From Octopus vulgaris (taxonomy: Eukaryota), in the NCBI GenBank assembly GCA_951406725.2, contig OX597822.1:43544001-43606000 (forward strand): a DNA stretch of 62,000 nucleotides. The letters are read 5' to 3'. A program made the translations under genes and the position numbers. Shown in pieces: positions 1-60,000 of the stretch. How positions within the stretch are numbered: the first letter of the stretch is position 1; each line of letters starts with the position of its first letter. The notes under the pieces were generated by a model. It was not told where the DNA came from and did not search any database. It was given only the letters and a program-made list of their open reading frames with translations.

Positions 1-111
1 ATTTGCTGCCGATAAATTTGGCGCGAGTGCGACGATTTGAAAATTTTAGGTCAGATATTGCCGAGGCAGGGATAGAGATGCCTCGTGATAATATCTGCTC
101 GGACCTGGCTG

Positions 112-216
112 TTTCTTACTGACGAATCTATCGGCCTATGGAAGATTGGCTTGATTTAATTTAATCAGGTTAGTTTACCATTAAACAATAGATGAAACGG
201 TGCATCGTATAAGAAA
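112..216 (+). ncRNA. type I hammerhead ribozyme, canonical core (copy 1)
   Basis: Helix I UUUCUUA(112-118)/UAAGAAA(210-216); core CUGACGA 119-125; helix II AUCUAU(126-131)/AUAGAU(188-193) with 56-nt loop; GAAA 194-197; helix III ACGG/UCGU with UGCA loop; GUA triplet, predicted cut after 209. Confidence 0.8.
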
Positions 217-595
217 TTACAGGGTAAATGTTTTTTTAATTTTCTCCTGGTTTGCGGAATTAATGTTATTTTGCGGTTGAAGCTTTGGCTGTTATTTCTA
301 GTGGGTGAATGGCCTATTATGGCCATTCCTTGATTGTGATGTTGAACTTATAAATGGTCTATGACTATTTAATTTTTTCCCACTAGGCCGCTGGTGGCAA
401 ATAAATTCTACGAAATTTTTTGCCACCCTATATTGATTAATTATGAATTTTCTGGTTAATTCCGTAATGAAATCGGCGGCTTATATTTGCTGCCGATAAA
501 TTTGGCGCGAGTGCGATGATTTGAAAATTTTAGGTCAGATATTGCCGAGGCAGGGATAGAGATGCCTCGTGATAATATCTGCTCGGACCTGGCTG

Positions 596-700
596 TTTCT
601 TACTGACGAATCTATCGGCCTATGGAAGATTGGCTTGATTTAATTTAATCAGGTTAGTTTACCATTAAACAATAGATGAAACTGTGCATCGTATAAGAAA
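596..700 (+). ncRNA. type I hammerhead ribozyme, canonical core (copy 2)
   Basis: Same motif shifted by 484 nt; a G>T change at 683 puts a mismatch in helix III; predicted cut after 693. Confidence 0.7.
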
Positions 701-854
701 TTACAGGGTAAATGTTTTTTTAATTTTCTCCTGGTTTGCGGAATTAATGTTATTTTGCGGTTGAAGCTTTGGCTGTTATTTCTAGTGGGTGAATGGCCTA
801 TTATGGCCATTCCTTGATTGTGATGTTGATATATATATATATATATATACATAT

Positions 855-1015
855 ATACGACAGGCTTCTTTCAGTTTCTGCCTACCAAATCCACTCACAA
901 GGCATTGGTCGGCCCGGGGCTATAGCAGAAGACACTTGCCCAAGATGCCACGCAGTGGGATTGAACCCGGAACCATGTGGTTGGTTAGCAAGCTACTTAC
1001 AACACAGCCACTCTA
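855..1015 (-). mobile_element. tRNA-derived SINE family A, head segment
   Basis: Reverse complement of GAGTGGCTGTG..TAAGTAGCTTGC..CCACATGGTTCCGGGTTCA.TCCCACTGCGTGGC...GAAAGAAGCC followed by (TA)n; A/B-box-like motifs; many copies in window. Confidence 0.85.
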
Positions 1016-1187
1016 TTTACCCCTTTCTCTCTCTTTCTCTCTCTGTTGAGTGTTTGTGAATATGTATGTATAAATATGTATATATAAATATATAAAGTAA
1101 TATTTATACGTAGGCGCATGTGCGTCGGAATAGTAAAATTTTATCGTTAGGGAATTCAAAATTCATGAAAATAATATACGCTTATAA

Positions 1188-6265: not shown

Positions 6266-6565
6266 TGGTTGCGAGCTTACAGACTCGTTAGCACGACGTG
6301 CGAAATGCTTTGCAGTATTTCGTCTGCCGTTACGTTCTGAGTTCAAATTCCGCCGAGGTCGACTTTGCCTTTCATCCTTTTGGGGTCGATTAAATAAGTA
6401 CCATTTACGCACTGGAGTCGATGTAGTCGACTTAATCCGTTTGTTCTCTTTGTGTTTAGCCCCTTGTGGATAGTAAAGAAATTGGTACTTCGTCTCTCTT
6501 TACGTTCTGAGTTCAAATTCCGCCGTGGTCAGCTTTGCCTTTTATCCTTTCGGGGTAGATAAATT
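6266..6565 (+). mobile_element. Deu/Nin-domain SINE, two tandem pieces
   Basis: TTCTGAGTTCAAATTCCGCCGAGGTCGACTTTGCCTTTCATCC...GGGGTCGAT..ATAAGTACC occurs twice; the core resembles the Deu/Nin SINE domain. Confidence 0.75.
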
Positions 6566-6589
6566 TTCTACTGTAGGCACAATATCCGT

Positions 6590-6773
6590 AATTTTGGGGG
6601 ACGGGGAAGTCGATTAGATCGATCCTAGAACGCAATTAGTGCTTAATTTATCGACCCCGAAAGGATAAAGGCAGAGTCGATCTCGGCGGAATTTGAACTC
6701 AGAACGTAACAGCAGACGAAATACCGCTAAGCATTTCGCCTGGCGTGCAAACGTTTCTTCCAACTTGCCGCCT
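6590..6773 (-). mobile_element. Deu/Nin-domain SINE
   Basis: Reverse complement of the same family (ATCGACCCCGAAAGGATAAAGGCAGAGTCGATCTCGGCGGAATTTGAACTCAGAACGTAAC). Confidence 0.8.
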
Positions 6774-15975: not shown

Positions 15976-18900
15976 ATGCTTAAATTAGGTTGTGTGAATG
16001 TGCGTGGCTTGGCGTCGGCTTGGAAGCAAGGTTACCTTCTAAACGACATGAAGTCACTGAACGTGGATATAGTAGCTATCAGTGAAACTAGACTCAGCAA
16101 GCCGCGGGCCCTCGCGTCCATGTTTGGCGATCAATTTGACATTTATTTTTCTCCTTGTCTGCCGAACATGGGTGGTGGAGGTACCGCGGTGCTTTTTTGA
16201 AAGAGTCTAAATGTAAAAGTAAGAACAATATTCCTAGACCCGGAGGGTAGGCTGGTTGTCTTGGACGTGGATGGCAGAAATGGGTGTGCATTCCGTCTGA
16301 TGGCAGTTTATGCACCGCCCTTAACGGGTCGGGCGGATTTCTTCAGACGTCTAGAGGTTTCCTGGGTACGTCTAGACCTTTACTGTTAGTAGGGGATTGG
16401 AACGCTAGCTTGGACACGCATCTAGATTATGTGGGAATGGATAGGAATAGAAGGTGGTGTAAGTGCCTCAAAGACCTACTCAGACGTTTCCATTTGTCTG
16501 ACAGGTTCCGACTCGACCATCTGAACGTGCCAACGTGGACTTGGAAAAACCGCGTCGGATCGTCGAGATCTTATCTAGATAGAATTCTATGCAGGGCAGC
16601 GGATAGGGATAGTGTAGGATGTCCACAATTTAAAATAGTCAGCTACATAGATCACAAATTTGTGACGTGTACGCTCGACTTAGATAAGACACATAGACAG
16701 GGTCCCGGTTACTGGAAACTGAACACATCGCTCTTAGCGCGACAGGTTTACAGGAATCGGATTAGCGAGTTAATTAAGAGGGCGCTGACGGGAGCCGTCG
16801 TTAACAACCGCTGGTGGTACGCCCTGAAAATGGCAATAAAATCGGAATCAATTAGGTTTAGCAAGGAATTAGCGATAGATCGAAATAGGGTAGAGGGAGA
16901 CCTGGTTAAGAAACTAGAAGACGCACTTACCACTGGCAGCGCAACCAACGTGCTGGCTGCGAGGATGGCCCTCGACCAACACCTCAACGCCAAGCACGAG
17001 GGTTGGGTTGCGTCGTCAGAGCTAAAATGCGTGCCTTAAGGAACGAAGGGATCGAAGCTGCGCGAGATGCCCGGGTAGCGGAGGCGCAGCGTGGTAACAG
17101 AGCCACCATTCGGTCTCTAATAGATCAACAGGGATGCAGTTTACTCGAACCCGAAAGGATGTGTAAGGCCTTTCAACAACACTTTGCTCGACTGTTTGGC
17201 GCGAGTGGTGGGTCGGAACGCGGGATGGATTTCAGTGCCTACCTGACCGACCTGCCGCGGCTTTCGGCAAGAGAAGCGGAGTGTTGTGAAAGTCACATCA
17301 CAGCTGCTGACGTGCGGGAAGCGATGGCGGGCTGCGTGAGGGATAAGTCACCTGGATTGGATGGTTTACCCTACGAGCTGTATTTTCAAATGCCAGACTT
17401 GTTTGGCGACCTCTTGGCATCAGTCTACTGCAACTGGCAACAAAACGGGAGAATCCCCGGTTTCGTGAGCCGAGGTGCAGTGACGTTGCTGAAGAAAGAC
17501 CCAAACAAGGGGAATTTTATAGATAATTTCAGGTCTATCACTCTGCTCAACGCAGATTTGAAAATTTTGGCCAAAGTAATAGCCGAGAGGTTGGCGCTTG
17601 TCATTGGTAAACTGGTCGACAGGGCGCAAACATGCGCCGTGCCGGGCAGAACCATACATGACAACCTCCATCTGATGCGCTACATTGTGGACAGGGTAGT
17701 TAAGGATCCTGGCATGGGTGGGGCGCTGATCATTTTGGATCAGTCTAAAGGCTTCGATAGGGTCGACCATCGGTACTTGGCGGCCGTCCTCAGGGCGGCT
17801 GGCTTCGGTCCCGTCTTCCGCGGTTGGATCGCTGCCTTGTATAGCGGCATCCGATTGGTGATTCGGGTGAACGGTCACTTGTCGAAACCGTTTGACATCA
17901 CGCGTTCGGTCCGTCAGGGGTGTCCCCTGTCGGCGCTTCTGTATGTATTGACTCTCGAGCCGCTACTACGGAAGCTAATGACACTGAGGGGCATCCCACG
18001 GGAACTGGGTTGCGGGAAGAGCGTGTCGGCATATGCGGACGATGTCACCGTCATAGTGTCGAGCGACAAACACATCCAGATAATAGGCGAGACACTAAAA
18101 AAATACGAAACGGTGACGGGAGCGAAGATTAACCCGGAAAAGTCAGTGGGTTTGCTACTCGGCACCTGGAGAAGCAAGCCATGCCGTCCGACTGCGGCTC
18201 AGTAGTGGGACGCTGGACGGACAAACCGGTTAAATTGCTCGGGGTCTGGTTCAGTCCGAACCTCCAAATGGAGAAGAACTGGGACGAGATCACGAGTAGA
18301 GTGGTCGCTCTCAGCCAAACATGGGCCGAGAGAAAGCTGTCTCTAAAAGGCCGGGCGGAGGTGGCGAACGCGTACATCGCATCCGTCATCGATTACCGCC
18401 TGACCGTCGTACCTTGTCCCGACGCCACCATCACCAAACTGGAACGCATACACTTCCGCTTCCTGTGGAAGGGTGGCGTTCCGATGGTGAGGAAGTCCAT
18501 TTGCTGTTAACATCCATTGAATGGAGGACTGGGCATGCCGTGGTTGATGATGCGCAGGCATGCGCTGAGACTGCGACATCTCTGGAACTTCATCGACGAC
18601 GGTGAACAGGTGTGGGCGCCGTTTGTGAGGCACGCTTTCCCGCAGCTCGTCTCACTGACCGAACTGCAAACGTGGATCAAGAAGAGACCGAAACTGGGCG
18701 ATTGGCACCGAGAGTGTCGCCAAGCTCTACAGCAGCTATGCCGACCGGGGTCAAACTTGTGCAACTTACAAACGACTAAAGCGTTCTATAGAGGACTAGT
18801 GGAGGGGAGGTCCGACGACACACTCGGGGCAAACCTGGGCGTCGACGAGAAATTCCTAACCCGCCTGTTCATGACGACGTTCGGGCCGGGGCCTATGGAT

Positions 18901-19419
18901 AACTTCCAGAAATCCCTGGCTTGGCAGTGCTATCGAGACGCACTACCTCTTCAAGAGAAGAGCTACAGGCACGGTTCGAAAACCATCACAGGACCGACCT
19001 GCCCGAGATGCGGTCAGAGCGACGAAACCGTTCTGCACGCACTCGTGCAGTGTCCAGATATTTCGGAGCTGTGGACCTTCGTCGAACAGCTGTTGTCACG
19101 TGTAGGTCGGGCCCGCCTATCGGCCGAGTCTGTCTTGAGTATTGTTCCACCATCTTCCTTTAAACGGGAAGGGAAAACGGTTTTCGTTACGCTGATGGCT
19201 ATGGCGAAAGAATGTGTGTGGTGGACGCGTTTGAAAGGACTGCAAACAAACACCTTCCTCTCTGGTCAGTCTCTCGTCAACTTTTTCAAGTACCACTTGA
19301 AAAGGAGGATGAGAATAGAGAGGAAGGCTTTGTCGAACGAATGTTCTAATAAAAAGTGGGTAAAAGTGGCAAAAATGGTCAGTATGAAAGACGACACTAT
19401 TATAAGCATAAATCTGTAA
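15976..19419 (+). pseudogene. Tx1 ORF2 (AP endonuclease, reverse transcriptase, zf-RVT), frameshifted
   Basis: MLKLGCVNVRGL..ISET (EN); GDWNA, YLDRI, DHK (EN); KSPGLDGLPYE, QGCPLS, YADD (RT); CPRCGQSDETVLHALVQC. Split over ORFs 15976, 16284, 17003, 18181 and 18517. Confidence 0.92.
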
Positions 19420-24816: not shown

Positions 24817-25718
24817 TGTGTGTGTGTGTGTGTGTAACATACGTTGATTTGCTGTGGTCTTTTATCAAGGCAAGTTTACACTACGGTAATTTCTGTTTCG
24901 AGAACTCTATTTCTCACCGGGCGGTGTTGAAAGAAAAAAATCCTTATGTTCAGCAGGAATTACGTTGGTTTGAATATAGCAGGTGTCTGGAACAGATAAA
25001 TGAACCGCAAATTTTTATAACGAAATTGATGAAACTGTATTGTGAAGGAAAATCATTAATTTCATCGGAGCACAAAACACACATATATACGTACATACCT
25101 AAGAACTTACACATATACACACCTACAAATGTGTTAGTGTATGTGTCTAATATATGTGAACATATACATTAAAGCACGTATACATACGCGAATAACGCCT
25201 TCATCAGTATCGCCACTTTAATAATAAATCTCTGCATTATTTTCGAATCCGTGGTTATTTTAGTAATAAAACTAATCATCGTAATTATAATAATTATAAT
25301 GGTTATGTTTATAATTATGTATCATATATTACAAATCAATATTTGGGTTATAAAATTGTATTTTTTATTCTAATGTACATAATAATATTGCATTTGTATT
25401 CTTTATGCAATCCCCAAAATTATTGTTTTCCGCATCATGTATTAAGCCTGCTATTTACGGATGTTCCCGGCTGTCGGTTGCACTATGTGTCTGCTTCGGT
25501 GTCCCCGGGGCGACTGGAAGAAGCGTTCAGCGCACGCATCAGAGACGCAGACGTCATTAATGTTAGAGAACATGGGTAATAGTAATGTATGAACACACAC
25601 ATACACACACAAACACGCAAACAATTATATACGTTGTGAAGAAGTGCTCAATATTACATATATATATATATATATATATATGTATAGGCGCATCACTTAT
25701 AAAGTTATATATATATAT

Positions 25719-25873
25719 AGCTTGCTTACCAACCACATGGTTCCGGGTTCAGTCCCACTGCGCGGCACCTTGGGCAAGTGTTTTCTACTAGAGCTTCGGG
25801 CCGACCAAAGCCTTGTGAGTGGATTTGGTAGACGGAAACTGCAAGAACCCCGTCGTATATATATATATAAATA

Positions 25874-27731: not shown

Positions 27732-27892
27732 CAGGCGTAGGAGTAGCTGTAGTAAGTAGCTTGCTTACCAACCAAATGTTTCCGGGTTCACTCCCACTTC
27801 GTGGCACATTGGTCAATTGCCTTCTAATATAGCCTCGGGCCGACTAAAGCATTGTGAGTGGATTTGGTAGACGGAAACTGAAAGAAGCCATC

Positions 27893-27895: not shown

Positions 27896-27956
<61 letters not shown>

Positions 27957-27961
<5 letters not shown>

Positions 27962-29175
27962 GTGAATGGAAGAAATGGAGTTGAACGAAGATTGTACAGA
28001 ATTCCTTTTATTACATTCTACACATGTTTCAAAGGCCACAATTTTCCAAATTCTGATTAAATAAGGATACCATATTGCAGCTTTCTCTTCAGGAAAAACC
28101 AGGAATTACGTTGTCAGAACAAAACAAAACAGAGGCGCAGCAAAGCAATTCGAACGTGGACGCTCCTTAAGAGCCCATGGTTAAACTGTTTATCAATGTA
28201 CGTTGAAATTGGGGGGTTGGTGGGGTCCGACAAAAGGTCCGTTGGAATAATTACAGGTCAGGCCGCGGTCAAATCTAGTAGGTGAGGAATTAATGAGAAC
28301 AAGGCACATATTGTTCGCCAGAGGCCGTTTGGTAAACGGGCTTTTACAGACGGCTTTTCGATGTCCCCATTGGCGGCGTCAAACTTATCTTACATATAAA
28401 TGATACCTAAGACAATTATCACCCTATTAAAATGAAAATAATTTTTGGAAATAATTTTTGAAAAAACTTTTAAAAAAATCTATGAATAACTCTTGCAAGG
28501 GGAAATTACTCCCATTAGGCGATTGGTCGGTTTTTTTTTAGAAGCAAACGCTGGAATTATATATACCCTTATGATTCTTTGACGATGTTAATTTTTAGAC
28601 AAGTAGGCCTAGACGAACACACGAACACAGAATTTTTTCAGCCGCCTGACAGGCCTTTTTCAGCAGTGCTCATTATCTAGCGCCCCTCGCCAACATACGG
28701 CCGCGCACACATAGGCTAGTATACACATACATGCTTTTAGTTAGGTTTTGTCTCGCCCCTAAAATACACCCCGTATTCTTAAAATATTCAGAACATTAGT
28801 TTTGGTCACACAGAACATCTCCACACCCCTTGTTCTCATTAATTCCTCACCTACTAGATTTGACCGCGACCTGACCTGTAATTATTCCAACGGTCCTATT
28901 GTCGGCCCCCACCAACCCCCCGATTTCAACGTACATTGATAAACAGTTTAACCATGGGCTCTTAAGGAGCGTCCTCGTTCGAATTGCTTTGCTGCACCTC
29001 TGTTTTGTTTTGTTCGGACAACGTAATTCCTGGTTTTTCCTGAAGAGAAAGCTGCAATATGGTATCCTTATTTAATCAGAATTTGGAAAATTGTGGCCTT
29101 TGAAACATGTGTAGAATGTAATAAAAGGAATTCTGTACAATCTTCGTTCAACTCCATTTCTTCCATTCACTAATT
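27957..29175. mobile_element. non-autonomous DNA element with 348-bp terminal inverted repeats
   Basis: 27957-28304 is the near-perfect reverse complement of 28828-29175 (AATTAGTGAATGGAAGAAATGG... / ...CCATTTCTTCCATTCACTAATT); 523-bp non-coding spacer. Confidence 0.85.
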
Positions 29176-29331
29176 ATATTAAACTTCAATTATCCGCACC
29201 AACGCACGGTTGCAACACCAAATGGTCTTATCTCCAACCGTGTTTTTTTCTGCTGTGATTTTTGCTACCCAGGTATCGGTTAAACTTTTGAATAATCTGT
29301 AACAAGAAAATTCATCTTTCCATTTCAACAA

Positions 29332-29373
<42 letters not shown>

Positions 29374-29400
29374 TTTATTTAAAGCAGCAGAAAATTCAAC

Positions 29401-29447
29401 AAAACCTATTACTCTGAGTTTCCCGTTGCCGTTCATCGGACAGTTTT
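29401..29447 (-). ncRNA. minimal type I hammerhead-like motif, CCGAUGA core variant
   Basis: AAAACUGU-CCGAUGA-A[CG GCAA CG]G-GAA-ACUCAGAGU-A-AUAGGUUUU; near-palindromic helix III; GUA triplet. Confidence 0.55.
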
Positions 29448-29455
29448 TACTAGAA

Positions 29456-29502
29456 AAAACTGTCCGATGAACGGCAACGGGAAACTCAGGGTAACAGGTT
29501 TT
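29456..29502 (+). ncRNA. minimal type I hammerhead-like motif, CCGAUGA core variant
   Basis: AAAACUGU-CCGAUGA-A[CG GCAA CG]G-GAA-ACUCAGGGU-A-ACAGGUUUU; predicted cut after 29493. Confidence 0.55.
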
Positions 29503-29599
29503 GTTGAATTTTCTGCTGCTTTAAATAAAGCATATTACTCTACCACTGGTATTTGAGTACTCTTTTTTCCACCTTGTTTCACATTTATGTGTTTACTCC

Positions 29600-32116: not shown

Positions 32117-32286
32117 AGGCACAGGAGTGGCTGTGTGGTTAGTAGCTTGCTTGCCCGCCACATGGTTCTGGGTTCAGTCCCACTGCGTGGCACCTTGGGA
32201 GAGTGTCTTCTACTATAGCCTCGGGCCGACCAAAGCCTTGTGAGTGGATTTGGTAGACGGAAATTAACAGAAGCCCGTCGTGTATG

Positions 32287-36175: not shown

Positions 36176-36417
36176 CTTAAAAGGTATGAAGAGTAACGTC
36201 TGTTTTTTACGTTATAGTTATAGTAAAAATAGTTTGACATTAAACTGAAGATTTACCATTATTTTTTGTTGAAAACATATCTATGAAACATCTACATGAA
36301 GAGTGGTGGCACTGACTTCAAACATTTTGGCATGCTAACCCTCGATGGATAGATTGCCGAAGGCTAGTAGGCTTAATATTTGGAGTTACTGTCTCCACTA
36401 TTCTTGTAAAAGAATAA

Positions 36418-36515
<98 letters not shown>
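36418..36515. repeat. (TCTA)n microsatellite, 5' flank of Tx1 copy C
   Basis: About 24 units. Confidence 0.95.
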
Positions 36516-39500
36516 CGGGCCCTAAGGTCCATGTTTGGCGGACAGTTTAACATTTATTTCGCTCCCTGTCTGCCGAGGATGGGCGGTAGTGGCACCGCGG
36601 TACTTTTTCACAAGAGCCTGGATCTCGAAGTCAAGACGATATTCGTAGACCCGGAGGGTAGACTGGTCGTTCTGGATGTTGACGGCAGCAATGGGTGCGC
36701 TTTTCGACTCGTATCAGTCTACGCACCGCCCTTAACAGGTCGGGCGGATTTCTTTCGACGTCTAGAAGTATTCTTGGGAACGTCTCGTCCTTTACTCTTA
36801 GTGGGGGATTGGAATGCTACCTTGGACACGCATGTAGACTACGTGGGTAGAGACAGAAACAGAAGGGGATGCAAATGCCTCAGAGACCTGCTCAGACGAT
36901 TCCAACTGTCTGACAGGTACCGACTCGACCACCCAAATGCACCAACGTGGACATGGAGCAACCGCAGTGGGTCGTCGAGATCGTATCTAGATAGGATACT
37001 GTGTAGGACAGTAGACAAGGATAACTTAGGATGTCCACAATTCCACACAGTCAGCTACACGGATCACAAATTGGTGACGTGTACGCTAGACTTAGATAAG
37101 GCACATAGACAGGGTCCTGGGTACTGGAAACTGAACGCATCATTCCCGTCCAGACAAGTTTTCAGAGACCGGATTAGCACACTAGTAAAGAGGGCTTTGA
37201 CGGGAGCCATCATCAACAACAAATGGTGGTTTGCCCTCAAGAGAGCAGTAAAAGCAGAAGCGATTAGGTACAGCAAAGCACTAGCCATAGATAGAAATAG
37301 AGTAGAGGGTGAGCTAGTTAAGAAGCTAGAAGAGGCAATTAGAAGCGGCATCGCATCCGACGTTTTGGCGGCGAGGTTGGCCCTCGACCAACACTTCAAC
37401 GCCAAACACGAAGGATGTGCTGTCAGAGCTAGGATGCGTGCTCTAAGGAACGAAGGTGTTGGAGCCGCGAGAGAGGCCCGGGTGGCAGAGGCGCAACAGG
37501 GCAACAAAGCCACCATTCGGTCACTGGTAGATGAACAGGGGCGCGAATTGCTCGAGCCAAGTAAAATGTGTGAGGCCTTTCAGCAGCATTTTGCCCGACT
37601 GTTCGGGACGAGTGAAGGGCAAGAACGTAGGGTGGACTTCAGTGCCTACCTACATAGCCTGCCACGACTCTCGACAAGAAAGCAGGGTGCTGCGAAGGTG
37701 CCATCACGGCGGCGGGAGTGCGGGAAGCGATAGCAGAATGCTCGAGGGACAAATCACCGGGATTGGATGGTCTACCCTACGAGTTTTACAATTGTATGCC
37801 AGACTTGTTTGGAGACGTCTTGGCAGCGGTATACTGCAACTGGCAGCAAAACGGGAGCATACCCGGTTTTGTGAGTCGAGGAGCTGTAACTCTGCTGAAG
37901 AAAGATCCAAACAAGGGAAACATTATAGATAACTTTAGACCAATCACGCTGCTCAATGCAGACCTGAAAATTTTGACAAAGGTGTTAGCCAAGAGGTTGG
38001 CGCTTGTCATCAAGAAACTGGTCGACAACGCACAAACGTGCGCCGTGCCGGGCCGGAGCATCCATGACAACCTCCATCTGATGCGCTACATCATAGACAG
38101 GGTAGTTAACGAACCTGGCATGGGTGGGGCCCTGATCAACTTGGATCAATCGAAAGCCTTTGATAGGGTAGACCATCGATACTTGGAGGCAGTCCTGAGG
38201 GCGGCTGGTTTCGGTCCCGTCTTCCGCGGCTGGATAGCTGCCATGTACAGAGGCATCCGTTCGGTAATTCGCGTAAATGGACATCTATCGAGACCTTTCG
38301 ACATTGCACGTTCGGTCCGTCAGGGATGCCCCCTCTCGGCGCTTCTATACGTATTGACTCTTGAGCCACTACTGCGGAAGCTGGCGACTCTAAGGGGCAT
38401 CCCGCGAGAATTGGGATGCGGGACGAGCGTGTCTGCATACGCGGACGACGTCACCGTCATAGTGTCAAGCCACGAGCACATCGAGCGGGTCGGCGAGACA
38501 CTGAAAGACTACGAAGCGGTGACAGGAGCAAAAATCAACCGGGAAAAGACAGTGGGCTTGCGGCTCGGCACCTGGAGAAGCAAGCCCATGCCGTCCACCA
38601 GTACCTCCGTCGTGGGACGCTGGACAGACGGCCCGGTTGAGTTGCTCGGGGTCTGGTTCGGTCCGGACCTCCAAATGGAGAAGAACTGGAACGAGATAAC
38701 GAGTAGGGTGGTCACTCTCGCCCAGCAATGGGCCGAGAGGAAACTGTCCCTAAAAGGTCGGGCGGAGGTGGTGAACGCGTACATCGCGTCCATCATCTAC
38801 TACCGCCTGACCGTCGTACCTTGTCCCGACCCTACCATCACCAAACTAGAACGCATCCTCTTCCGCTTCTTGTGGAAAGGATGCGTCCCGATGGTCAGGC
38901 GATCCATTTGCTGTCAACACCCGTTAAAAGGAGGGCTGGGCATGCCGTGGTTGATGATGCGCAGACACGCGCTGAGACTGCGACATCTCCGGCTCTATGT
39001 AGACGACGGTGAACAGGTGTGGTCGCCGTTTGTGAGGCACGCATTCCCGCAACTCGTCTCCATGACCGAACTACAGTCGTGGATCAAAAAGAGGCCGAGG
39101 AAGGGCGAATGGCACCGCGAGTGTCGCGTTGCTCTCAAGCAACTCTGCCGTCCCGGGTCGACCTTGAGTGACTTCAACACAACCAAAGCATTCTATAGGG
39201 GATTAGTGGATGGGAGGTACGACGACGAGCTCGGAGCAAACCTGGGCGCCGACGAGGAATACCTGACCCGCCTGTTTCAAACGACTTTCGGCCCGGGACC
39301 TATGGACAACTTCCAGAGATCCCTGGCCTGGCGGTGCTACCGAGAAGCGCTACCCGTTCGGGATAAGCTCTACAGGCATGACTCAAGAAACACGGGGCCG
39401 ACCTGCCCGAGATGCGGGCAGAGCGACGAAACCGCTCTGCACGCAATCGTGCAGTGTCCAGCAATTTCCCACCTGTGGGCTTATGTCGAACGACTGCTGT

Positions 39501-39739
39501 CACGTGTGGGACGTGTCGGTTTATCAGCCGAGTCTATCGTTAATATCGTCACGCCTCCTTCCTTCAAACGGGAAGGAAGAGCTATTTTTATCATACTTGT
39601 GGCTATGGCGAAAGAATGTATCTGGTGGACGCGCCTGAAAGGATTAGAGACAAACACTTTCCTCTCTGGTCAATCTCTCATCAACTTCTTCAAGTATCAC
39701 TTGAAGAGGAAAGTGAGTAGAGAGGCAAGTTTTGTCTAG
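36516..39739 (+). pseudogene. Tx1 ORF2, nearly intact (EN, RT, zf-RVT)
   Basis: ORFs 36345-37733 and 37718-39739; apparent 1-nt loss near 37680 and 2-nt loss near 39715 relative to sister copies; YADD and QGCPLS intact. Confidence 0.9.
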
Positions 39740-46124: not shown

Positions 46125-46189
<65 letters not shown>

Positions 46190-46221
46190 ATATATACATA
46201 CATATATACATACATACATAA

Positions 46222-46267
<46 letters not shown>

Positions 46268-46433
46268 CATAAGGGACTAAAGCCATCTGAATATGGCTAG
46301 GGACAGGGCAGGGTGGTGGGGGTGTTACTGTTGCATTTAGCCCCAGGCGAACATCGACGTCACCAGATAGGCCCGACACCGTCACGGTGTCCTTTAACCT
46401 GCAAAGGGAGGTAATTCCCCGATGAAGCGGAAA

Positions 46434-46482
46434 CCACACACGGACCATGGTTTCAAGGTGTATTGCCTATCGTCGGCGTGTG
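46434..46482 (-). ncRNA. type I hammerhead-like motif, CCGACGA core variant
   Basis: CACACG-CCGACGA-U[AGG CAAUACA CCU]U-GAA-ACCAUGGU-C-CGUGUG; perfectly palindromic helix III; GUC triplet. Confidence 0.6.
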
Positions 46483-46843
46483 GTAGGCTTCCGCTTCCTC
46501 GACGAATTCTCACTCTGCAGGATATTCATATATAGATTTTCAAGCAAAATACATTTGCTGATTTCGAAAATCTGTTCGAAAGCAATAATAATTCTCTAAA
46601 AGAGATATAGACAGTAACTGCTCGATAACATAAGGGACTAAAGCCATCTGAATATGGCTAGGGACAGGGCAGATTCAGATGGCTTTAGTCCCTTATGTTA
46701 TCGAGCAGTTACTGTCTATATCTCTTTTAGAGAATTATTATTGCTTTCGAACAGATTTTCGAAATCAGCAAATGTATTTTGCTTGAAAATCTATATATGA
46801 ATATCCTGCAGAGTGAGAATTCGTCGAGGAAGCGGAAGCCTAC

Positions 46844-46889
46844 CACACGCCGACGATAGGCAATACACCATGAAACCATGGTCCGTGTG
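46844..46889 (+). ncRNA. type I hammerhead-like motif, CCGACGA core variant
   Basis: As above with one helix II change; predicted cut after 46883. Confidence 0.55.
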
Positions 46890-47204
46890 TGGTTTCCGCT
46901 TCATCGGGGAATTACCTCCCTTTGCAGGTTAAAGGACACCGTGACGGTGTCGGGCCTATCTGGTGACGTCGATGTTCGCCTGGGGCTAAATGCAACAGTA
47001 ACACCCCCACCACCCTGCCCTGTCCCTAGCCATATTCAGATGGCTTTAGTCCCTTATGTTATCGAGCAGTTACTGTCTATATCTCTTTTAGAGAATTATT
47101 ATTGCTTTCGAACAGATTTTCGAAATCAGCAAATGTATTTTGCTTGAAAATCTATATATGAATATCCTGCAGAGTGAGAATTCGTCGAGGAAGCAGAAGC
47201 CTAC

Positions 47205-47250
47205 CACACGCCGACGATAGGCAATACACCTTGAAACCATGGTCCGTGTG
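47205..47250 (+). ncRNA. type I hammerhead-like motif, CCGACGA core variant
   Basis: As above; predicted cut after 47244, 361 nt from the previous site. Confidence 0.6.
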
Positions 47251-47465
47251 TGGTTTCCGCTTCATCGGGGAATTACCTCCCTTTGCAGGTTAAAGGACAC
47301 CGTGACGGTGTCGGGCCTATCTGGTGACGTCGATGTTCGCCTGGGGCTAAATGCAACAGTAACACCCCTACCAACCTGCCCTGTCCCTAGCCATATTCAG
47401 ATGGCTTTAGTCCCTTATGTTATCGAGCAGTTACTGTCTATATCTCTTTTAGAGAATTATTATTG

Positions 47466-47503
<38 letters not shown>

Positions 47504-49524: not shown

Positions 49525-49671
49525 ATGCAGGAGTGGCTGTGTGGTAAGTAGCATGGTTCTGGCGTCAGTCTTGCGGCGTGGTACCTTGGGCAAGTGTCTT
49601 CTATTATAGCTTCGGGCCGACCAAAGCCCTGTGAGTGGATTTGGTGGTCGGAAATTGAAAGAAGCCCATCG

Positions 49672-56799: not shown

Positions 56800-57225
56800 T
56801 AACGATTGTTTGCGAACCTGATGTGGCAGCCCTATTTTGGGGCGAATGCTACTGTTGTTTAGTCCCAGGAGACATCGACTCCAGCTGGCTATACGACACA
56901 CTATCTGTGTCTCTATATTTTCGAACAAGAGAGGTATACCCCCCACCCAGCACAAAGCAGTATCGTACGGTTTCAGACGAAAAGTTATTCAGTTCCGACG
57001 AAGAGAACACCCCCTGAAACTGTACGGTCAACAAATATTGCTTTGTTCTGGGATGGGGTGCTAATCTTCCCTTTTAGAAAATATGAGGACATAGACCATG
57101 TGTCGTATAGACAGCTGGAGACGATTTTTCGGTGGGCTAAAGAACAGTAGCAATCGCGCCAATGTAGGACTGCCACATCAGGTTGGCAATAAGGTTTGTA
57201 ACTTAATATCACTCGTTGAGAGATT
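56800..57225. mobile_element. diverged head-to-head inverted element with hammerhead-like motif
   Basis: 56810-56975 is an imperfect reverse complement of 57014-57190 (AACCTGATGTGGCAG/CTGCCACATCAGGTT, CCAGCTG, TATACGACAC). Confidence 0.7.
56992..57032 (+). ncRNA. minimal type I hammerhead-like motif, CCGACGA core variant
   Basis: GUU-CCGACGA-AG..CU-GAA-ACUGUACGGU-C-AAC; near-palindromic helix III; GUC triplet; helix I only 3 bp. Confidence 0.45.
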
Positions 57226-57233
57226 TAGGAACA

Positions 57234-59432
57234 ACCATCACTCTGCTTAATGCAGACTTGAAAATTTTGGCCAAGGTGTTAGCCAAGAGGTTGGCGCTTG
57301 TCATCGAGAAACTGGTCGACAAGGCGCAAACGTGCGCCGTGCCGGGCCGGACCATCCATGACAACCTCCACCTGATGCGCTACATCATAGACAGGGTAGT
57401 TAACGAACCTGGCATGGGTGGGGCGCTGATCAATTTGGATCAATCGAAAACTTTCGATAGGGTAGACCATCGATACTTGGAGGCAGTCCTCAGAGCGGCT
57501 GGCTTCGGTCCCGTCTTCCGCGGCTGGATAGCCGCTTTGTACAGAGGCATCCGTTCGGTAATTCGCGTAAATGGACATCTATCGAGACCTTTCGACATCG
57601 CACGTTCGGTCCGTCAGGGATGCCCCCTCTCGGCGCTTCTATACGTATTGACTCTCGAGCCACTACTGCGGAAGCTGGCGACTCTGAAGGGCATCCCGCG
57701 AGAACTGGGATGCGGGACGAGTGTGTCTGCATACGCGGACGACGTCACCGTCATAGTGTCTAGCCACGAGCAGGTCGGCAAACACTGAAAAACTACGAAG
57801 CGGTGACAGGAGCAAAAATCAACCTGGAAAAGTCAGTGGGTTTGCGACTAGGCACCTGGAGAAGCAAGCCCATGCCGTCCACCAGCGCCTCCGTTGTGGG
57901 ACGCTGGATCGACGGTCCGGTCGAGTTGCTCGGGGTCTGGTTCGGTTCGGACCTCCAAATGGAGAAGAACTGGAACGAGATAACGAGTAGGGTGGTCTCT
58001 CTCGCCCGGCAATGGGCCGAGAGGAAACTGTCCCTAAAAGGTCGGGTGAAGGTGGCGAACACGTACATCGCGTCCGTCATCTATTACTGCCTGACCGTCG
58101 TGCCTTGTCCCAACCCTACCATCACCAAACTAGAACGCATTCTCTTTTGCTTCTTGTGGAAAGGATGCGTCCCGATGGTCAGGCGATCCATTTGCTGTCA
58201 ACACCCGTTAAAAGGAGGATTGGGCATGCCGTGGTTGATGATGCGCAGACACGCGCTGAGACTGCAACATCTCAGGCTTTTCGTAGACGAAGGTGAACAG
58301 GTGTGGTCGCCGTTTGTGAGGCTCGTCTCCATGACCGAACTGCAATCGTGGATCAAAAAAAGGGCGAGGAAGGGCGAATGGCACCGCGAGTGTCGCGTTG
58401 CTCTCAAGCAACTCTGCCGTCCTGGGTCAACCTTGAGTGACTCCATCACAACCAAAGCATTCTATAGGGGATTAGTGGAGGGGAGGTACGACGACGAGCT
58501 CGGGGCGAACCTGGACGTCGACGAGGAATACCTGACCCGCCTGTTCGGGACGACTTTCGGGCCAGGGCCCATGGACAACTTCCAGAGATCCCTGGCCTGG
58601 CAGTGGTACCGAGAAGCGCTACCTGTTCGGGATAAGCTCTACAGACACGGCTCGAGAAACACGGGGCCGACCTGCCCGAGATGTGGTCAGAGCGACGAAA
58701 CCGTTCTGCACGTACCCGTGCAGTGTGCAACAATTTCCGACCTGTGGGCTTATGTCGAACAACTGCTGTCACGTGTGGGACGAGTCGGTTTAGTAGCTGA
58801 GTCTATCGTCAATATTGTCACGCCTCCTTCCTTCAAACGGGAAGGAAGAGCTATTTTCATCATCCTTGTGGCTATGGCGAAAGAATGTATCTGGTGGACG
58901 CGTCTGAAAGGATTGGAAACAAACACCTTCCTCTCTGATCACCCTCTCATCAACTTCTTCAAGTACCACTTGAAAAGGAAAGTGAGAGTAGAAAGGCAAG
59001 TTTTGTCTAGCGAATGTTTTAAAAAAAGATGGGTGAATGTAGCAAGGATGGCACGTGGATGGCAAGGATGTAACAAGAATGGTCTATTTCGTAGGCTTTT
59101 CTTCCCACGGATAAACCTTACTTGCTTTCCCCTTTACACCATACATCATGACACTGTGATACACGATCCCTATTGATCGTTTTCTTTTCCTCTTCCCCCC
59201 TTTTTTCCGCTTTTTCTTCTTTTTTCATTTTTCTCTTCCTTTGTTCCTTTTCCCTTTTTTCTTATTTTCTTTTCCTTTTTTTTTTGTTCTTTTTTCCCTT
59301 TTACGATCCCTTTTGATCGAAAACCTACGCCACCCTTTTTTTTAATTCTTTTTTTTTTCATCCCCCAACAGAAAAGCTCTACCTTGTAACTTGTCCCATG
59401 TGTGTGCAGCCCTGTGTGGCCAATAAAGAAAC

Positions 59433-59564: not shown

Positions 59565-60000
59565 GGCGCTAGAAGGTCTGTGTGTTAAGAAGCTTGCTTT
59601 CCAACGACATGTTTCCGGGTTCAGTCCAACTGCATAGCAATTTGGGCAAGTGTCTTCTACTATACACTTGGGCCGGCCAAACCCTTGTGAATGGATTTGG
59701 GTGACGGAAACAGAAAGAAGCCCTTCGTATATATACATATGTGTGTGTGTGTGTATACATACATATATATATATATATGTATATATGTATATATATATAT
59801 ACGTATGTGTGTATCTGTGTTCCCCAACCATCGCTGGACAACCGATGTTGCTGTGTATACGTCCTCGTCACATAGCTGTTCGGCAGAAAGAGACCGACAG
59901 AATAAGTACTAAGCTCACAAAGAATAAGTCCTTGGGTGGATTTGTTCGACCAAAGGCGGTGCCCCAGCATGGCCGCAGTGAAAAACTGAAACATGTAAAA
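59565..60000 (+). mobile_element. SINE family A, complete
   Basis: Head, linker and tail motifs present. Confidence 0.8.

What the first reader, a model, noticed from the sequence alone, without database searches (positions are those of the whole stretch)
1..829. 484-bp tandem repeat in which every unit carries a complete canonical hammerhead ribozyme (candidate retrozyme/circRNA element)
Seen in sequence: each unit has helix I (7 bp), CUGACGA, helix II (6 bp) with an unusually long 56-nt structured loop, GAAA, helix III (4 bp) and a GUA site in exact type I order. Predicted cuts after 209 and 693 release one 484-nt monomer. The unit also contains many other hairpins and no credible ORF. Established: tandem 170-400 nt type I hammerhead repeats in metazoans (non-LTR retrozymes, de la Pena lab) self-cleave and yield circRNAs. 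Inference: this is a cephalopod retrozyme-like element, larger than typical, copied from a circular or multimeric RNA into a (TA)n tract.
Basis: partly seen in the sequence, partly recalled or inferred. Interest (0 to 1): 0.88.

Follow-up and report, generated by a model that had tools for sequence, protein, structure and literature searches.

The report
Hammerhead-ribozyme tandem repeat (retrozyme) in octopod DNA
The window starts inside a head-to-tail 484-bp repeat in which each unit carries a self-cleaving hammerhead RNA motif, so it is best read as one more member, with an unusually long arm, of the known animal "retrozyme" class of small circular-RNA retroelements.

Summary
Window 1-829 is a 484-bp direct tandem repeat of 1.71 units, 343/345 identical, cut off by the window start. 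Each unit carries a type I hammerhead on the + strand. It has helix I (8 bp), CUGACGA, helix II (6 bp plus a 56-nt insert), GAAA, helix III (4 bp, palindromic UGCA loop) and a GUA cleavage site. Cuts after 209 and 693 would release a 484-nt RNA.

A motif this good did not occur in 200 shuffles of the window or in 120 Mb of simulated sequence.

"Complete canonical" is overstated:
- the 10.1-11.1 pair is A-U, not G-C;
- copy 2 has a broken helix III pair;
- no Rfam model and no generic covariance model detects the motif.

The unit is non-coding, 37% GC and strongly self-paired. It fits every sequence-level criterion of metazoan non-LTR retrozymes, and 484 bp is inside the published size range.

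A second, unrelated 361-bp array with a hammerhead-like motif lies at 46264-47467. It sits inside (TA)n and has a Penelope-like insertion architecture.

Copy number, covariation, expression and cleavage could not be tested.

Verdict: new member of a known kind; moderate interest.

The parts
1..484 (+). Repeat unit 1 (484 bp). The array may continue to the left of the window.
485..829 (+). Repeat unit 2, truncated at unit position 345. It differs from unit 1 at 2 positions (517 T, 683 T).
104..224 (+). Hammerhead domain of unit 1, including the closing stem 104-107/220-223 and the internal loop 108-110/218-219.
   Evidence: MFE -37.5 kcal/mol, z = -5.6
111..118 (+). Helix I, 5' strand. It pairs with 210-217 (8 pairs, the outermost a G.U).
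119..125 (+). Catalytic core C3-A9, CUGACGA.
126..193 (+). Helix II. The basal 6 bp are 126-131/188-193 (the first pair is A10.1-U11.1). The 56-nt insert 132-187 extends it as an imperfect rod hairpin.
   Evidence: -22.8 kcal/mol for the arm alone
194..209 (+). GAAA (194-197), helix III 197-200/205-208 with the palindromic loop UGCA, then G207-U208-A209. The predicted cut is between 209 and 210.
210..693 (+). Predicted 484-nt monomer released by cuts at both hammerheads. As a circle its MFE is -148.3 kcal/mol, with helices I and II of the hammerhead retained.
595..701 (+). Hammerhead of unit 2. The core is 603-609, GAAA is 678-681 and the cut is after 693. T683 breaks the middle pair of helix III.
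830..857 (.). (TA)n tract abutting the sense-3' end of the array. It is the tail microsatellite of the neighbouring SINE.
858..1016 (-). tRNA-derived SINE copy whose tail end faces the array. This is flanking context, not part of the element.
46264..47467 (.). Separate element used as a comparator. It has a 361-bp tandem unit. The + array is 46673-47467 and an inverted 5'-truncated array is 46264-46672, joined head to head. Both outer ends lie in (TA)n. Hammerhead-like motifs lie at 46437-46482 (-), 46844-46889 (+) and 47205-47250 (+).

Best explanation
The locus is an array of a non-autonomous, hammerhead-bearing retroelement of the metazoan non-LTR retrozyme type, in an octopod-like cephalopod genome.

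Proposed working (only the sequence anatomy is shown here; every activity step is inferred from the family):
1. The array is transcribed on the + strand as a multimer.
2. The type I hammerhead in each unit cuts after A209 and A693, giving 484-nt monomers.
3. Cutting probably works best in multimers. Helix III is marginal as a hairpin (-1.2 kcal/mol), but with its palindromic loop it forms a 12-bp inter-unit duplex (-19.5 kcal/mol), the classic double-hammerhead arrangement.
4. [quoted passage not shown]
5. A reverse transcriptase supplied in trans, most likely from a Penelope-like element whose endonuclease nicks AT-rich or (TA)n DNA, primes on the target and copies the circular or multimeric RNA more than once round. 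This leaves a head-to-tail array whose sense-3' end sits at an internal unit position (345) against (TA)n.
For: - Tandem 484-bp unit, 99.4% identical copies.
- Full hammerhead core and three helices in type I order on one strand only. It is unique in the window, absent from 200 shuffles and from 120 Mb of simulated sequence at comparable stringency.
- Helices I and II, the rod-like extension of helix II and a closing stem beyond an internal loop all appear unprompted in the MFE fold. The hammerhead-constrained fold is only 2.1 kcal/mol worse.
- Helices I and II are retained in the MFE of the 484-nt circle, -148.3 kcal/mol, z = -7.2.
- Helix I (8 bp) and helix II (6 bp) up to their internal loops equal the canonical 6 and 4 bp plus 2 each, which keeps the two loops in register (PMC4209133; inference).
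- Short helix III with a palindromic loop is the metazoan type I hallmark (energies).
- No ORF over 60 aa and no Pfam hit. GC is 37%.
- Family criteria are taken from PMC7229834.
- The sense-3' end lies on (TA)n.
- An unrelated 361-bp array with a hammerhead-like motif in the same window has both sense-3' ends in (TA)n, an inverted 5'-truncated twin and a 44-nt one-sided extension. That is the published Penelope-like insertion signature (PMC8557442; PMC11167929).
- Cephalopods carry PLEs, and the giant squid genome has 235 Rfam hammerhead hits.
Against: - Only one locus with two near-identical copies, so there is no covariation. One of the two substitutions damages helix III in copy 2.
- A10.1-U11.1 replaces the highly conserved G10.1-C11.1.
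- No Rfam hammerhead model and no generic covariance model reports the motif. Detection rests on my own descriptor, which allows a long loop II.
- My extrapolation suggests on the order of one equally good chance motif per few Gb.
- A strongly negative folding z-score is not rare in this repeat-rich window.
- No Penelope-like ORF lies in the window; the RT-bearing ORFs scanned are AP-endonuclease LINEs.
- No dispersed copies, target-site duplication, transcript or circle could be examined.
Confidence: 0.7

Rival explanations
1. It is the terminal (pseudo-LTR) part of a larger Penelope-like element, or of a complex Penelope-type insertion that lies mostly to the left of the window. It would then not be a free-standing retrozyme array.
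For: - PLEs carry type I hammerheads in their pLTRs, occur as partial tandems and favour AT-rich or (TA)n targets.
- Retrozymes are reported as close relatives of pLTRs.
- The array is cut by the window start.
Against: - Units abut directly at 484/485 with no ORF between them, and no frame exceeds 60 aa.
- PLE hammerheads are typically minimal, lacking helix III, whereas this one has a 4-bp helix III and a closing stem.
- No RT plus GIY-YIG ORF is present in the 62 kb.
Confidence: 0.13
2. It is an ordinary structured tandem duplication or satellite made at the DNA level, in which a hammerhead-like arrangement occurs by chance or as a dead relic. No ribozyme activity or RNA circle would be involved.
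For: - No covariance model detects the motif.
- The conserved G10.1-C11.1 pair is non-consensus, and copy 2 has a damaged helix III.
- Other segments of this window also fold far better than shuffles.
- Genome-wide, about one chance motif of this quality is conceivable (extrapolation).
Against: - The expected number in this window is about 5e-5.
- All 13 invariant core positions are present.
- The insert is not a random loop but a coaxial rod continuing helix II.
- A closing stem and matched internal loops are present.
- Loop 3 is palindromic.
- The motif sits in exactly the genomic context (tandem unit, non-coding, AT-rich) in which real metazoan hammerheads occur.
Confidence: 0.12
3. It is a DNA copy of an exogenous viroid-like or delta-like circular RNA replicon captured by a cellular reverse transcriptase.
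For: The size (484 nt), the hammerhead, the compact fold and the more-than-unit-length tandem copy are also what such a capture would look like.
Against: - There is a ribozyme on one polarity only. Nothing was found on the - strand by the descriptor or by Rfam at E<=10.
- There is no ORF.
- A second, unrelated array with the same insertion behaviour in the same 62 kb points to an endogenous element class.
Confidence: 0.04

Closest known systems
Metazoan non-LTR retrozymes (Acropora about 225-245 bp, Mytilus about 350-390 bp, axolotl; Cervera & de la Pena 2020, PMC7229834)
   Same: Head-to-tail tandem units. One type I hammerhead per unit on one strand. No LTR, PBS or PPT and no ORF. GC below 50%. 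The monomer is predicted to be highly self-paired with the hammerhead free to form. Helix III is weak with a palindromic loop.
   Different: The unit is 484 bp, above the 170-400 nt of that paper but inside the 51-972 bp of the 2026 survey. Helix II carries a 56-nt rod-like extension. The 10.1-11.1 pair is A-U. The motif is invisible to Rfam models. Expression, circles and copy number are unknown here. Within the library searched, I found no paper describing a cephalopod retrozyme.
pDo500 satellite of Dolichopoda cave crickets (about 500-bp unit with a hammerhead; PMC2837043)
   Same: A tandem unit of about 500 bp with a single embedded hammerhead. A G.U pair in stem III. Dimeric (double-hammerhead) processing has been proposed.
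   Different: pDo500 is a high-copy satellite (about 5% of the genome) with a compact 49-nt hammerhead. Here there is one short array and a 107-nt hammerhead with a long helix II.
Penelope-like element pLTR hammerheads (Cervera & de la Pena 2014, PMC4209133; Craig et al. 2021, PMC8557442; Frangieh et al. 2024, PMC11167929)
   Same: Type I topology, dimer-prone helix III, tandem organisation, insertion at AT-rich or (TA)n DNA, and the element's 3' end at an internal RNA position.
   Different: PLE hammerheads are minimal (no helix III, short helix I) and flank a roughly 3-kb RT/GIY-YIG ORF. This unit has no ORF and a fuller hammerhead.
Newt satellite 2 and Schistosoma Sm-alpha hammerhead repeats
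   Same: Genomic tandem or SINE-like repeats with type I hammerheads. Weak helix III, and cleavage favoured in multimers.
   Different: There is no sequence relation. Those have G10.1-C11.1 and short helix II loops with defined loop-loop contacts.
Plant LTR retrozymes (PMC4918200)
   Same: Non-autonomous retroelements that give hammerhead-processed circular RNAs.
   Different: They have type III hammerheads inside LTRs, PBS and PPT motifs, 4-bp TSDs and Gypsy-dependent mobilisation. None of these features is present here.

Membership tests
Hammerhead ribozyme, type I | Invariant core C3 U4 G5 A6 N7 G8 A9, G12 A13 A14, A15.1-U16.1, and H17 not G | tested here: met
   CUGACGA at 119-125, GAAA at 194-197, U208, A209. 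The same holds in copy 2.
Hammerhead ribozyme, type I | Three helices in the order I-core-II-GAAA-III-site-I, with helices II and III capped and helix I open | tested here: met
   Helices of 8, 6 and 4 pairs. Helices I and II are recovered in unconstrained MFE folds.
Hammerhead ribozyme, type I | G10.1-C11.1 closing pair of helix II (highly conserved; PMC4209133) | tested here: not met
   A126-U193 occupies 10.1-11.1 in both copies.
Hammerhead ribozyme, type I | Match to curated covariance models (Rfam hammerhead families) | tested here: not met
   No hit at the gathering score or at E<=10 on 1-900 or on 100-230. A generic 50-position model also fails to span the 107-nt motif. The likely cause is the 56-nt insert, but that cause was not tested directly.
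Hammerhead ribozyme, type I | Loop 1 / loop 2 tertiary contact | tested here: inconclusive
   Internal loops follow 8 bp of helix I and 6 bp of helix II, the canonical 6 and 4 plus 2 each. The canonical loop nucleotides are not recognisable.
Hammerhead ribozyme, type I | Compensatory changes in the helices across homologues | not testable with these tools
   Only two copies exist, with 2 differences, one of which breaks a helix III pair. No further copies were reachable.
Hammerhead ribozyme, type I | Site-specific self-cleavage | not testable with these tools
   This needs in vitro transcription.
Metazoan non-LTR retrozyme | [quoted passage not shown] | tested here: met
   484-bp period, at least 1.71 units. 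Published ranges are 150-450 bp and 51-972 bp.
Metazoan non-LTR retrozyme | A type I hammerhead in each unit, on one polarity only | tested here: met
   Both units carry it on the + strand and none lies on the - strand. Helix III of copy 2 is weakened.
Metazoan non-LTR retrozyme | No LTR/PBS/PPT, no coding capacity, GC below 50% | tested here: met
   Units abut directly. The longest open frame is 60 aa with no Pfam hit. GC is 37.4%.
Metazoan non-LTR retrozyme | Monomer predicted as a stable, highly self-paired circle with the hammerhead able to form | tested here: met
   -148.3 kcal/mol, 62% of bases paired, z = -7.2, helices I and II retained. Caveat: 9 of 11 microsatellite-free control segments scored between -0.2 and -4.8, but two, both with inverted repeats, were lower.
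Metazoan non-LTR retrozyme | Many dispersed genomic arrays (mobility), with TSDs when present | not testable with these tools
   There is no second copy in the 62 kb. The left end lies outside the window, and no cephalopod genome collection was available.
Metazoan non-LTR retrozyme | Expression as linear and circular monomer RNA | not testable with these tools
   No transcriptome access.
Metazoan non-LTR retrozyme | Co-occurrence with Penelope-like elements in the genome | tested here: inconclusive
   No PLE ORF lies in the window. The literature reports PLEs in cephalopods. The neighbouring 361-bp array shows a PLE-type insertion signature.
Autonomous Penelope-like element (pLTR-ORF-pLTR) | RT plus GIY-YIG ORF between the repeats | tested here: not met
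   Units abut with no ORF. The scanned RT-bearing ORFs of two of the three LINE copies carry Exo_endo_phos endonuclease and RVT_1 domains, so they are LINEs.
Viroid-like / delta-like circular RNA replicon | Ribozymes in both polarities, or an encoded antigen | tested here: not met
   No ribozyme on the - strand and no ORF.

The most novel reading that the evidence does not exclude
Octopod genomes may harbour retrozyme families whose hammerheads carry a long rod-like helix II and an A10.1-U11.1 pair, and which therefore escape covariance-model censuses. These arrays would be integrated into (TA)n microsatellites by Penelope-like machinery. The 361-bp array at 46264-47467 (inverted 5'-truncated twin, one-sided 44-nt 'tail', both ends in (TA)n) would then be a direct structural footprint linking retrozymes to PLE target-primed reverse transcription. 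That link has so far been argued mainly from co-occurrence and pLTR sequence similarity.
Probability: 0.3. Interest if true: 0.55.

Novelty: new member of a known kind. Interest (0 to 1): 0.38.

Why it matters
If active, this would extend ribozyme-made circular RNAs to cephalopods. It would also show that hammerheads with large helix II insertions are missed by the standard Rfam screen, so published counts (for example 235 hits in the giant squid genome) would understate them. Together with the neighbouring 361-bp array, it offers testable junctions for how retrozymes are integrated: (TA)n targets, internal start of reverse transcription and twin inverted copies. It does not change the current picture of what retrozymes are.

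Tried and rejected
- Rfam at the gathering score on the whole window, and at E<=10 on 1-900 and on 100-230, gave no hammerhead hit. Only weak chance hits to miRNA, CRISPR-repeat and similar models appeared.
- A generic type I hammerhead covariance model, built from 40 simulated sequences, did not report the locus with filters off, either on the whole window or on 90-240. It aligned only fragments, because the 107-nt motif is too long for a 50-position model. It did reveal the second element.
- Exact-protein look-ups of ORFs in the unit, at its junction, in the LINE and in the second array all returned nothing on record.
- Homologue searches with the 53-aa unit ORF and the 89-aa ORF of the second array found no candidates.
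- Two metagenome DNA scans found nothing useful. The first gave no match. The second gave 19 matches confined to the pattern plus or minus 5 nt, which are chance hits.
- The folding z-score is not a stand-alone argument. Many (TA)n-bearing or inverted-repeat segments of this window score -5 to -10 or lower.
- Strand asymmetry favours the + strand: 20 G.U pairs on + against 6 on -, and the mirrored + structure scores -122 against -148 kcal/mol. I judge this to be probably largely compositional, so it is only weak support.
- A SINE insertion into a longer array is rejected, because no unit sequence resumes beyond the SINE.
- The unit and the 361-bp unit share no significant similarity.

Full report
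WHAT IS THERE

Window 1-829 is a direct tandem repeat with a 484-bp period. Unit 1 is 1-484 and unit 2 is 485-829. They differ at 2 of 345 positions: 33 C>T and 199 G>T. The window starts inside the array, so 1.71 units is a minimum. The unit occurs nowhere else in the 62 kb. TRF does not list the array, presumably because it holds fewer than two copies. GC is 37.4%, against 38.3% for the window.

THE HAMMERHEAD

Read directly, the + strand carries the following parts:
- a closing stem CCUG/CAGG (104-107/220-223)
- an internal loop (108-110/218-219)
- helix I (111-118/210-217; 7 Watson-Crick pairs plus 1 G.U)
- CUGACGA (119-125)
- helix II (126-131/188-193)
- a 56-nt insert (132-187)
- GAAA (194-197)
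- helix III (A197-U208, C198-G207, G199-C206, G200.U205) capped by UGCA
- G207-U208-A209, with the predicted cut between 209 and 210

Copy 2 repeats this 484 nt further on, with the cut after 693. The released monomer is 210-693, 484 nt.

IS IT MORE THAN CHANCE?

I wrote a descriptor requiring CUGANGA, helix II with a loop of up to 80 nt, GAAA, helix III, UH and helix I.
- It hits only this locus, on either strand of the window.
- It gives 0 hits in 200 dinucleotide-preserving shuffles at I>=5, II>=4, III>=3. At the most relaxed setting it gives 0.01 hits per shuffled window.
- In 120 Mb of first-order Markov sequence with the window's composition there were 15 relaxed hits. None reached (5,4,3), and the best had 15 total pairs against 18 observed.
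- Extrapolating geometrically (my inference), the expectation is about 5e-5 per window and of order one per few Gb of genome.

The motif alone is therefore highly significant here but not absolutely unique at genome scale. The context has to carry the rest of the argument.

SUPPORTING ANATOMY

- Unconstrained folding of 104-224 gives the closing stem, helix I and helix II. The insert forms a coaxial imperfect rod of 4 + 14 bp with a hexaloop. The MFE is -37.5 kcal/mol, z = -5.6, and no shuffle of 200 does as well.
- The only departure from the hammerhead fold is an alternative ACGA/UCGU pairing that replaces helix III. Enforcing the three hammerhead helices costs 2.1 kcal/mol.
- The arm 126-193 alone folds at -22.8 kcal/mol.
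- Helix III is marginal as a hairpin, at -1.2 kcal/mol for copy 1 and 0 for copy 2. ACGGUGCAUCGU is self-complementary, though, and forms a 12-bp duplex between two units. The duplex scores -19.5 kcal/mol for copy 1 with copy 1 and -14.4 for copy 1 with copy 2.
- A short helix III with a small palindromic loop that favours dimeric cleavage in tandem transcripts is the stated hallmark of canonical metazoan type I hammerheads (PMC4209133).
- The same source gives helix I as 6 bp and helix II as 4 bp up to the interacting loops. Here the values are 8 and 6, so both are two pairs longer and the loops stay in register (inference).

WHERE 'COMPLETE CANONICAL' FAILS

- The 10.1-11.1 pair is A-U, whereas G10.1-C11.1 is described as highly conserved.
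- In copy 2, G683U converts the central G-C pair of helix III into U.C.
- No Rfam family matches at the gathering score, nor at E<=10 on 1-900 or on 100-230.
- A generic hammerhead covariance model that I built from simulated consensus sequences also cannot span the motif. The likely reason is the 56-nt insert, which makes the motif 107 nt long, but I could not test a deletion version.

THE REST OF THE UNIT

- The longest open frame in a concatenated unit is 60 aa, and none has a Pfam match.
- As a circle, the 484-nt monomer folds to -148.3 kcal/mol with 62% of bases paired. Shuffles average -109.8 +/- 5.3, giving z = -7.2. Hammerhead helices I and II are retained.
- Caveat: this window is full of (TA)n tracts and inverted repeats, and many control segments reach z of -5 to -10. 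Of 11 microsatellite-free controls, nine lie between -0.2 and -4.8. The two lower ones contain inverted repeats. The value is supportive, not diagnostic.
- The + strand fold has 20 G.U pairs against 6 on the - strand. The mirrored + structure is 26 kcal/mol worse on the - strand. I judge this to be probably largely compositional.

CONTEXT

- The array's sense-3' end is at unit position 345, which is the 3' base of a small predicted hairpin at 330-345. It abuts (TA)n at 830-857.
- That tract is the normal tail of the tRNA-derived SINE at 858-1016 on the - strand. All 8 copies in the window whose match reaches that end have a TA/CA-type microsatellite there.
- No unit sequence resumes beyond the SINE. 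The array therefore ends in, or was inserted into, that tail.
- The window's three reverse-transcriptase elements are LINEs, not Penelope-like elements. ORFs from two of the three copies were scanned and carry AP-endonuclease (Exo_endo_phos) and RVT_1 domains.
- The best named homologue of one of their RTs is a protein of the octopod Argonauta hians at 65% identity. Unnamed hits reach 72%. This supports 'cephalopod' without fixing the species.

A SECOND ELEMENT

The generic model flagged three copies of a hammerhead-like motif at 46437-46482 (-), 46844-46889 (+) and 47205-47250 (+), at 17.1, 13.2 and 17.1 bits, with a rough E of 0.02 for the two best-scoring copies and 0.3 for the third. They lie in a 361-bp tandem repeat.
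- The + array is 46673-47467, 2.2 units with 4 differences between units.
- An inverted, 5'-truncated array of 409 nt lies at 46264-46672.
- The two are joined head to head, and both outer (sense-3') ends lie in (TA)n, at 46130-46263 and 47468-47503.
- The + array runs 44 nt further along the unit than the inverted one.

An inverted 5'-truncated copy, a 30-40-bp 'tail' at one end, and insertion into (TA)n or AT-rich DNA with an internal start of reverse transcription are the published signatures of Penelope-like elements (PMC8557442; PMC11167929).

The motif has a 6-bp helix I, an internal loop and a 9-bp closing stem. Helix III is the palindrome ACCAUGGU with no loop. The core, however, reads CCGACGA, with C at position 4, and 10.1/11.1 is U.U. 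Activity is therefore doubtful. Its circular monomer folds at z = -6.5. It shares no sequence with the 484-bp unit.

I use it only as a comparator. It shows that arrays carrying hammerhead-type motifs whose sense-3' ends lie in (TA)n are a recurrent kind of insertion in this genome.

COMPARISON WITH WHAT IS KNOWN

- Metazoan non-LTR retrozymes are defined as short tandem repeats with a type I hammerhead. They lack LTR, PBS and PPT motifs, have GC below 50%, and are expressed as highly self-paired linear and circular RNAs. Penelope-like elements are their probable mobilisers (PMC7229834; PMC7761336).
- All the sequence-level criteria are met here. Mobility, expression and cleavage are untestable with these tools.
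- The size is not exceptional. Consensus lengths of 51-972 bp are reported, and the cricket pDo500 hammerhead satellite is about 500 bp.
- Hammerheads are known in cephalopods only as 235 Rfam hits in the giant squid genome.
- I found no paper in the searched library describing a cephalopod retrozyme.

WHAT COULD NOT BE DONE

No cephalopod genome or transcriptome was reachable. Exact-protein look-ups, two ORF-based homologue searches and two metagenome scans gave nothing usable. Copy number, covariation, the left junction and expression remain open.

VERDICT

- The best explanation is a non-LTR retrozyme array whose hammerhead variant has a long helix II and an A10.1-U11.1 pair (confidence 0.7).
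- The rivals are a fragment of a larger Penelope-type insertion (0.13), an inactive or chance motif in an ordinary tandem duplication (0.12), and a captured exogenous circular RNA (0.04).
- It is a new member of a known kind, of moderate interest.

Noticed in passing
window 46264-47467 (flanks 46130-46263 and 47468-47503): A second, unrelated array with a 361-bp tandem unit. A + array and an inverted 5'-truncated array are joined head to head, and both outer ends lie in (TA)n. One end extends 44 nt further along the unit, like a PLE 'tail'. Each unit carries a hammerhead-like motif with the non-consensus core CCGACGA, a U.U pair at 10.1/11.1 and a palindromic helix III with no loop. The circular monomer folds at z = -6.5. 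The architecture matches published Penelope-like insertions.
   Followed up: partly
window 858-1016 and 7 further copies (e.g. 25718-25855, 27748-27889, 32125-32280, 49531-49666, 59570-59722): A tRNA-derived SINE family. Its tail end carries a TA/CA-type microsatellite in all 8 copies whose match reaches that end. Many (TA)n tracts of this window, including the one next to the finding, are therefore SINE tails.
   Followed up: partly
window 27953-29179: An element bounded by 352-nt terminal inverted repeats that are 97.7% complementary. It starts right after a SINE (TA)n tail and is flanked by TA on both sides. It looks like a foldback or DNA-transposon-type element. Weak covariance-model hits inside the arms are not hammerheads.
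   Followed up: no
window 29368-29535: A 168-nt near-perfect palindrome (95%) next to (A)n and (TA)n. It has weak 36-nt similarity to unit positions 220-253 of the finding (E = 0.007), which is probably T-rich chance similarity.
   Followed up: no
window 16284-19419, 36345-39739, 57216-59176: Three copies of an AP-endonuclease plus RVT_1 plus zf-RVT LINE, partly frameshifted. The closest named homologue is from the octopod Argonauta hians (65% identity). Pfam was run on ORFs of the first two copies only.
   Followed up: partly
one search hit list (P0010, P0003, P0004): A protein annotated as coming from a 'MAG: Herbaspirillum sp.' is 62% identical to this LINE over 59% of the query. JGI metagenome 3300045642 holds a 72%-identical copy. 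This is probably cephalopod-like host DNA in a bacterial bin and in a metagenome.
   Followed up: no
window 6300-6740: Direct and inverted copies of another tRNA-like SINE (GTTCAAATTCCGCCG box) form a strong foldback. This explains the z = -10 control segment.
   Followed up: no
window 822-829 vs 46264-46271 (- strand): The array junction of the finding and that of the inverted 361-bp array are both preceded by ATGTT(G/A)(A/T) directly before (TA)n (GATGTTGA|TATA and TATGTTAT|ATAT). Two cases are too few to tell a start-site motif from coincidence.
   Followed up: no
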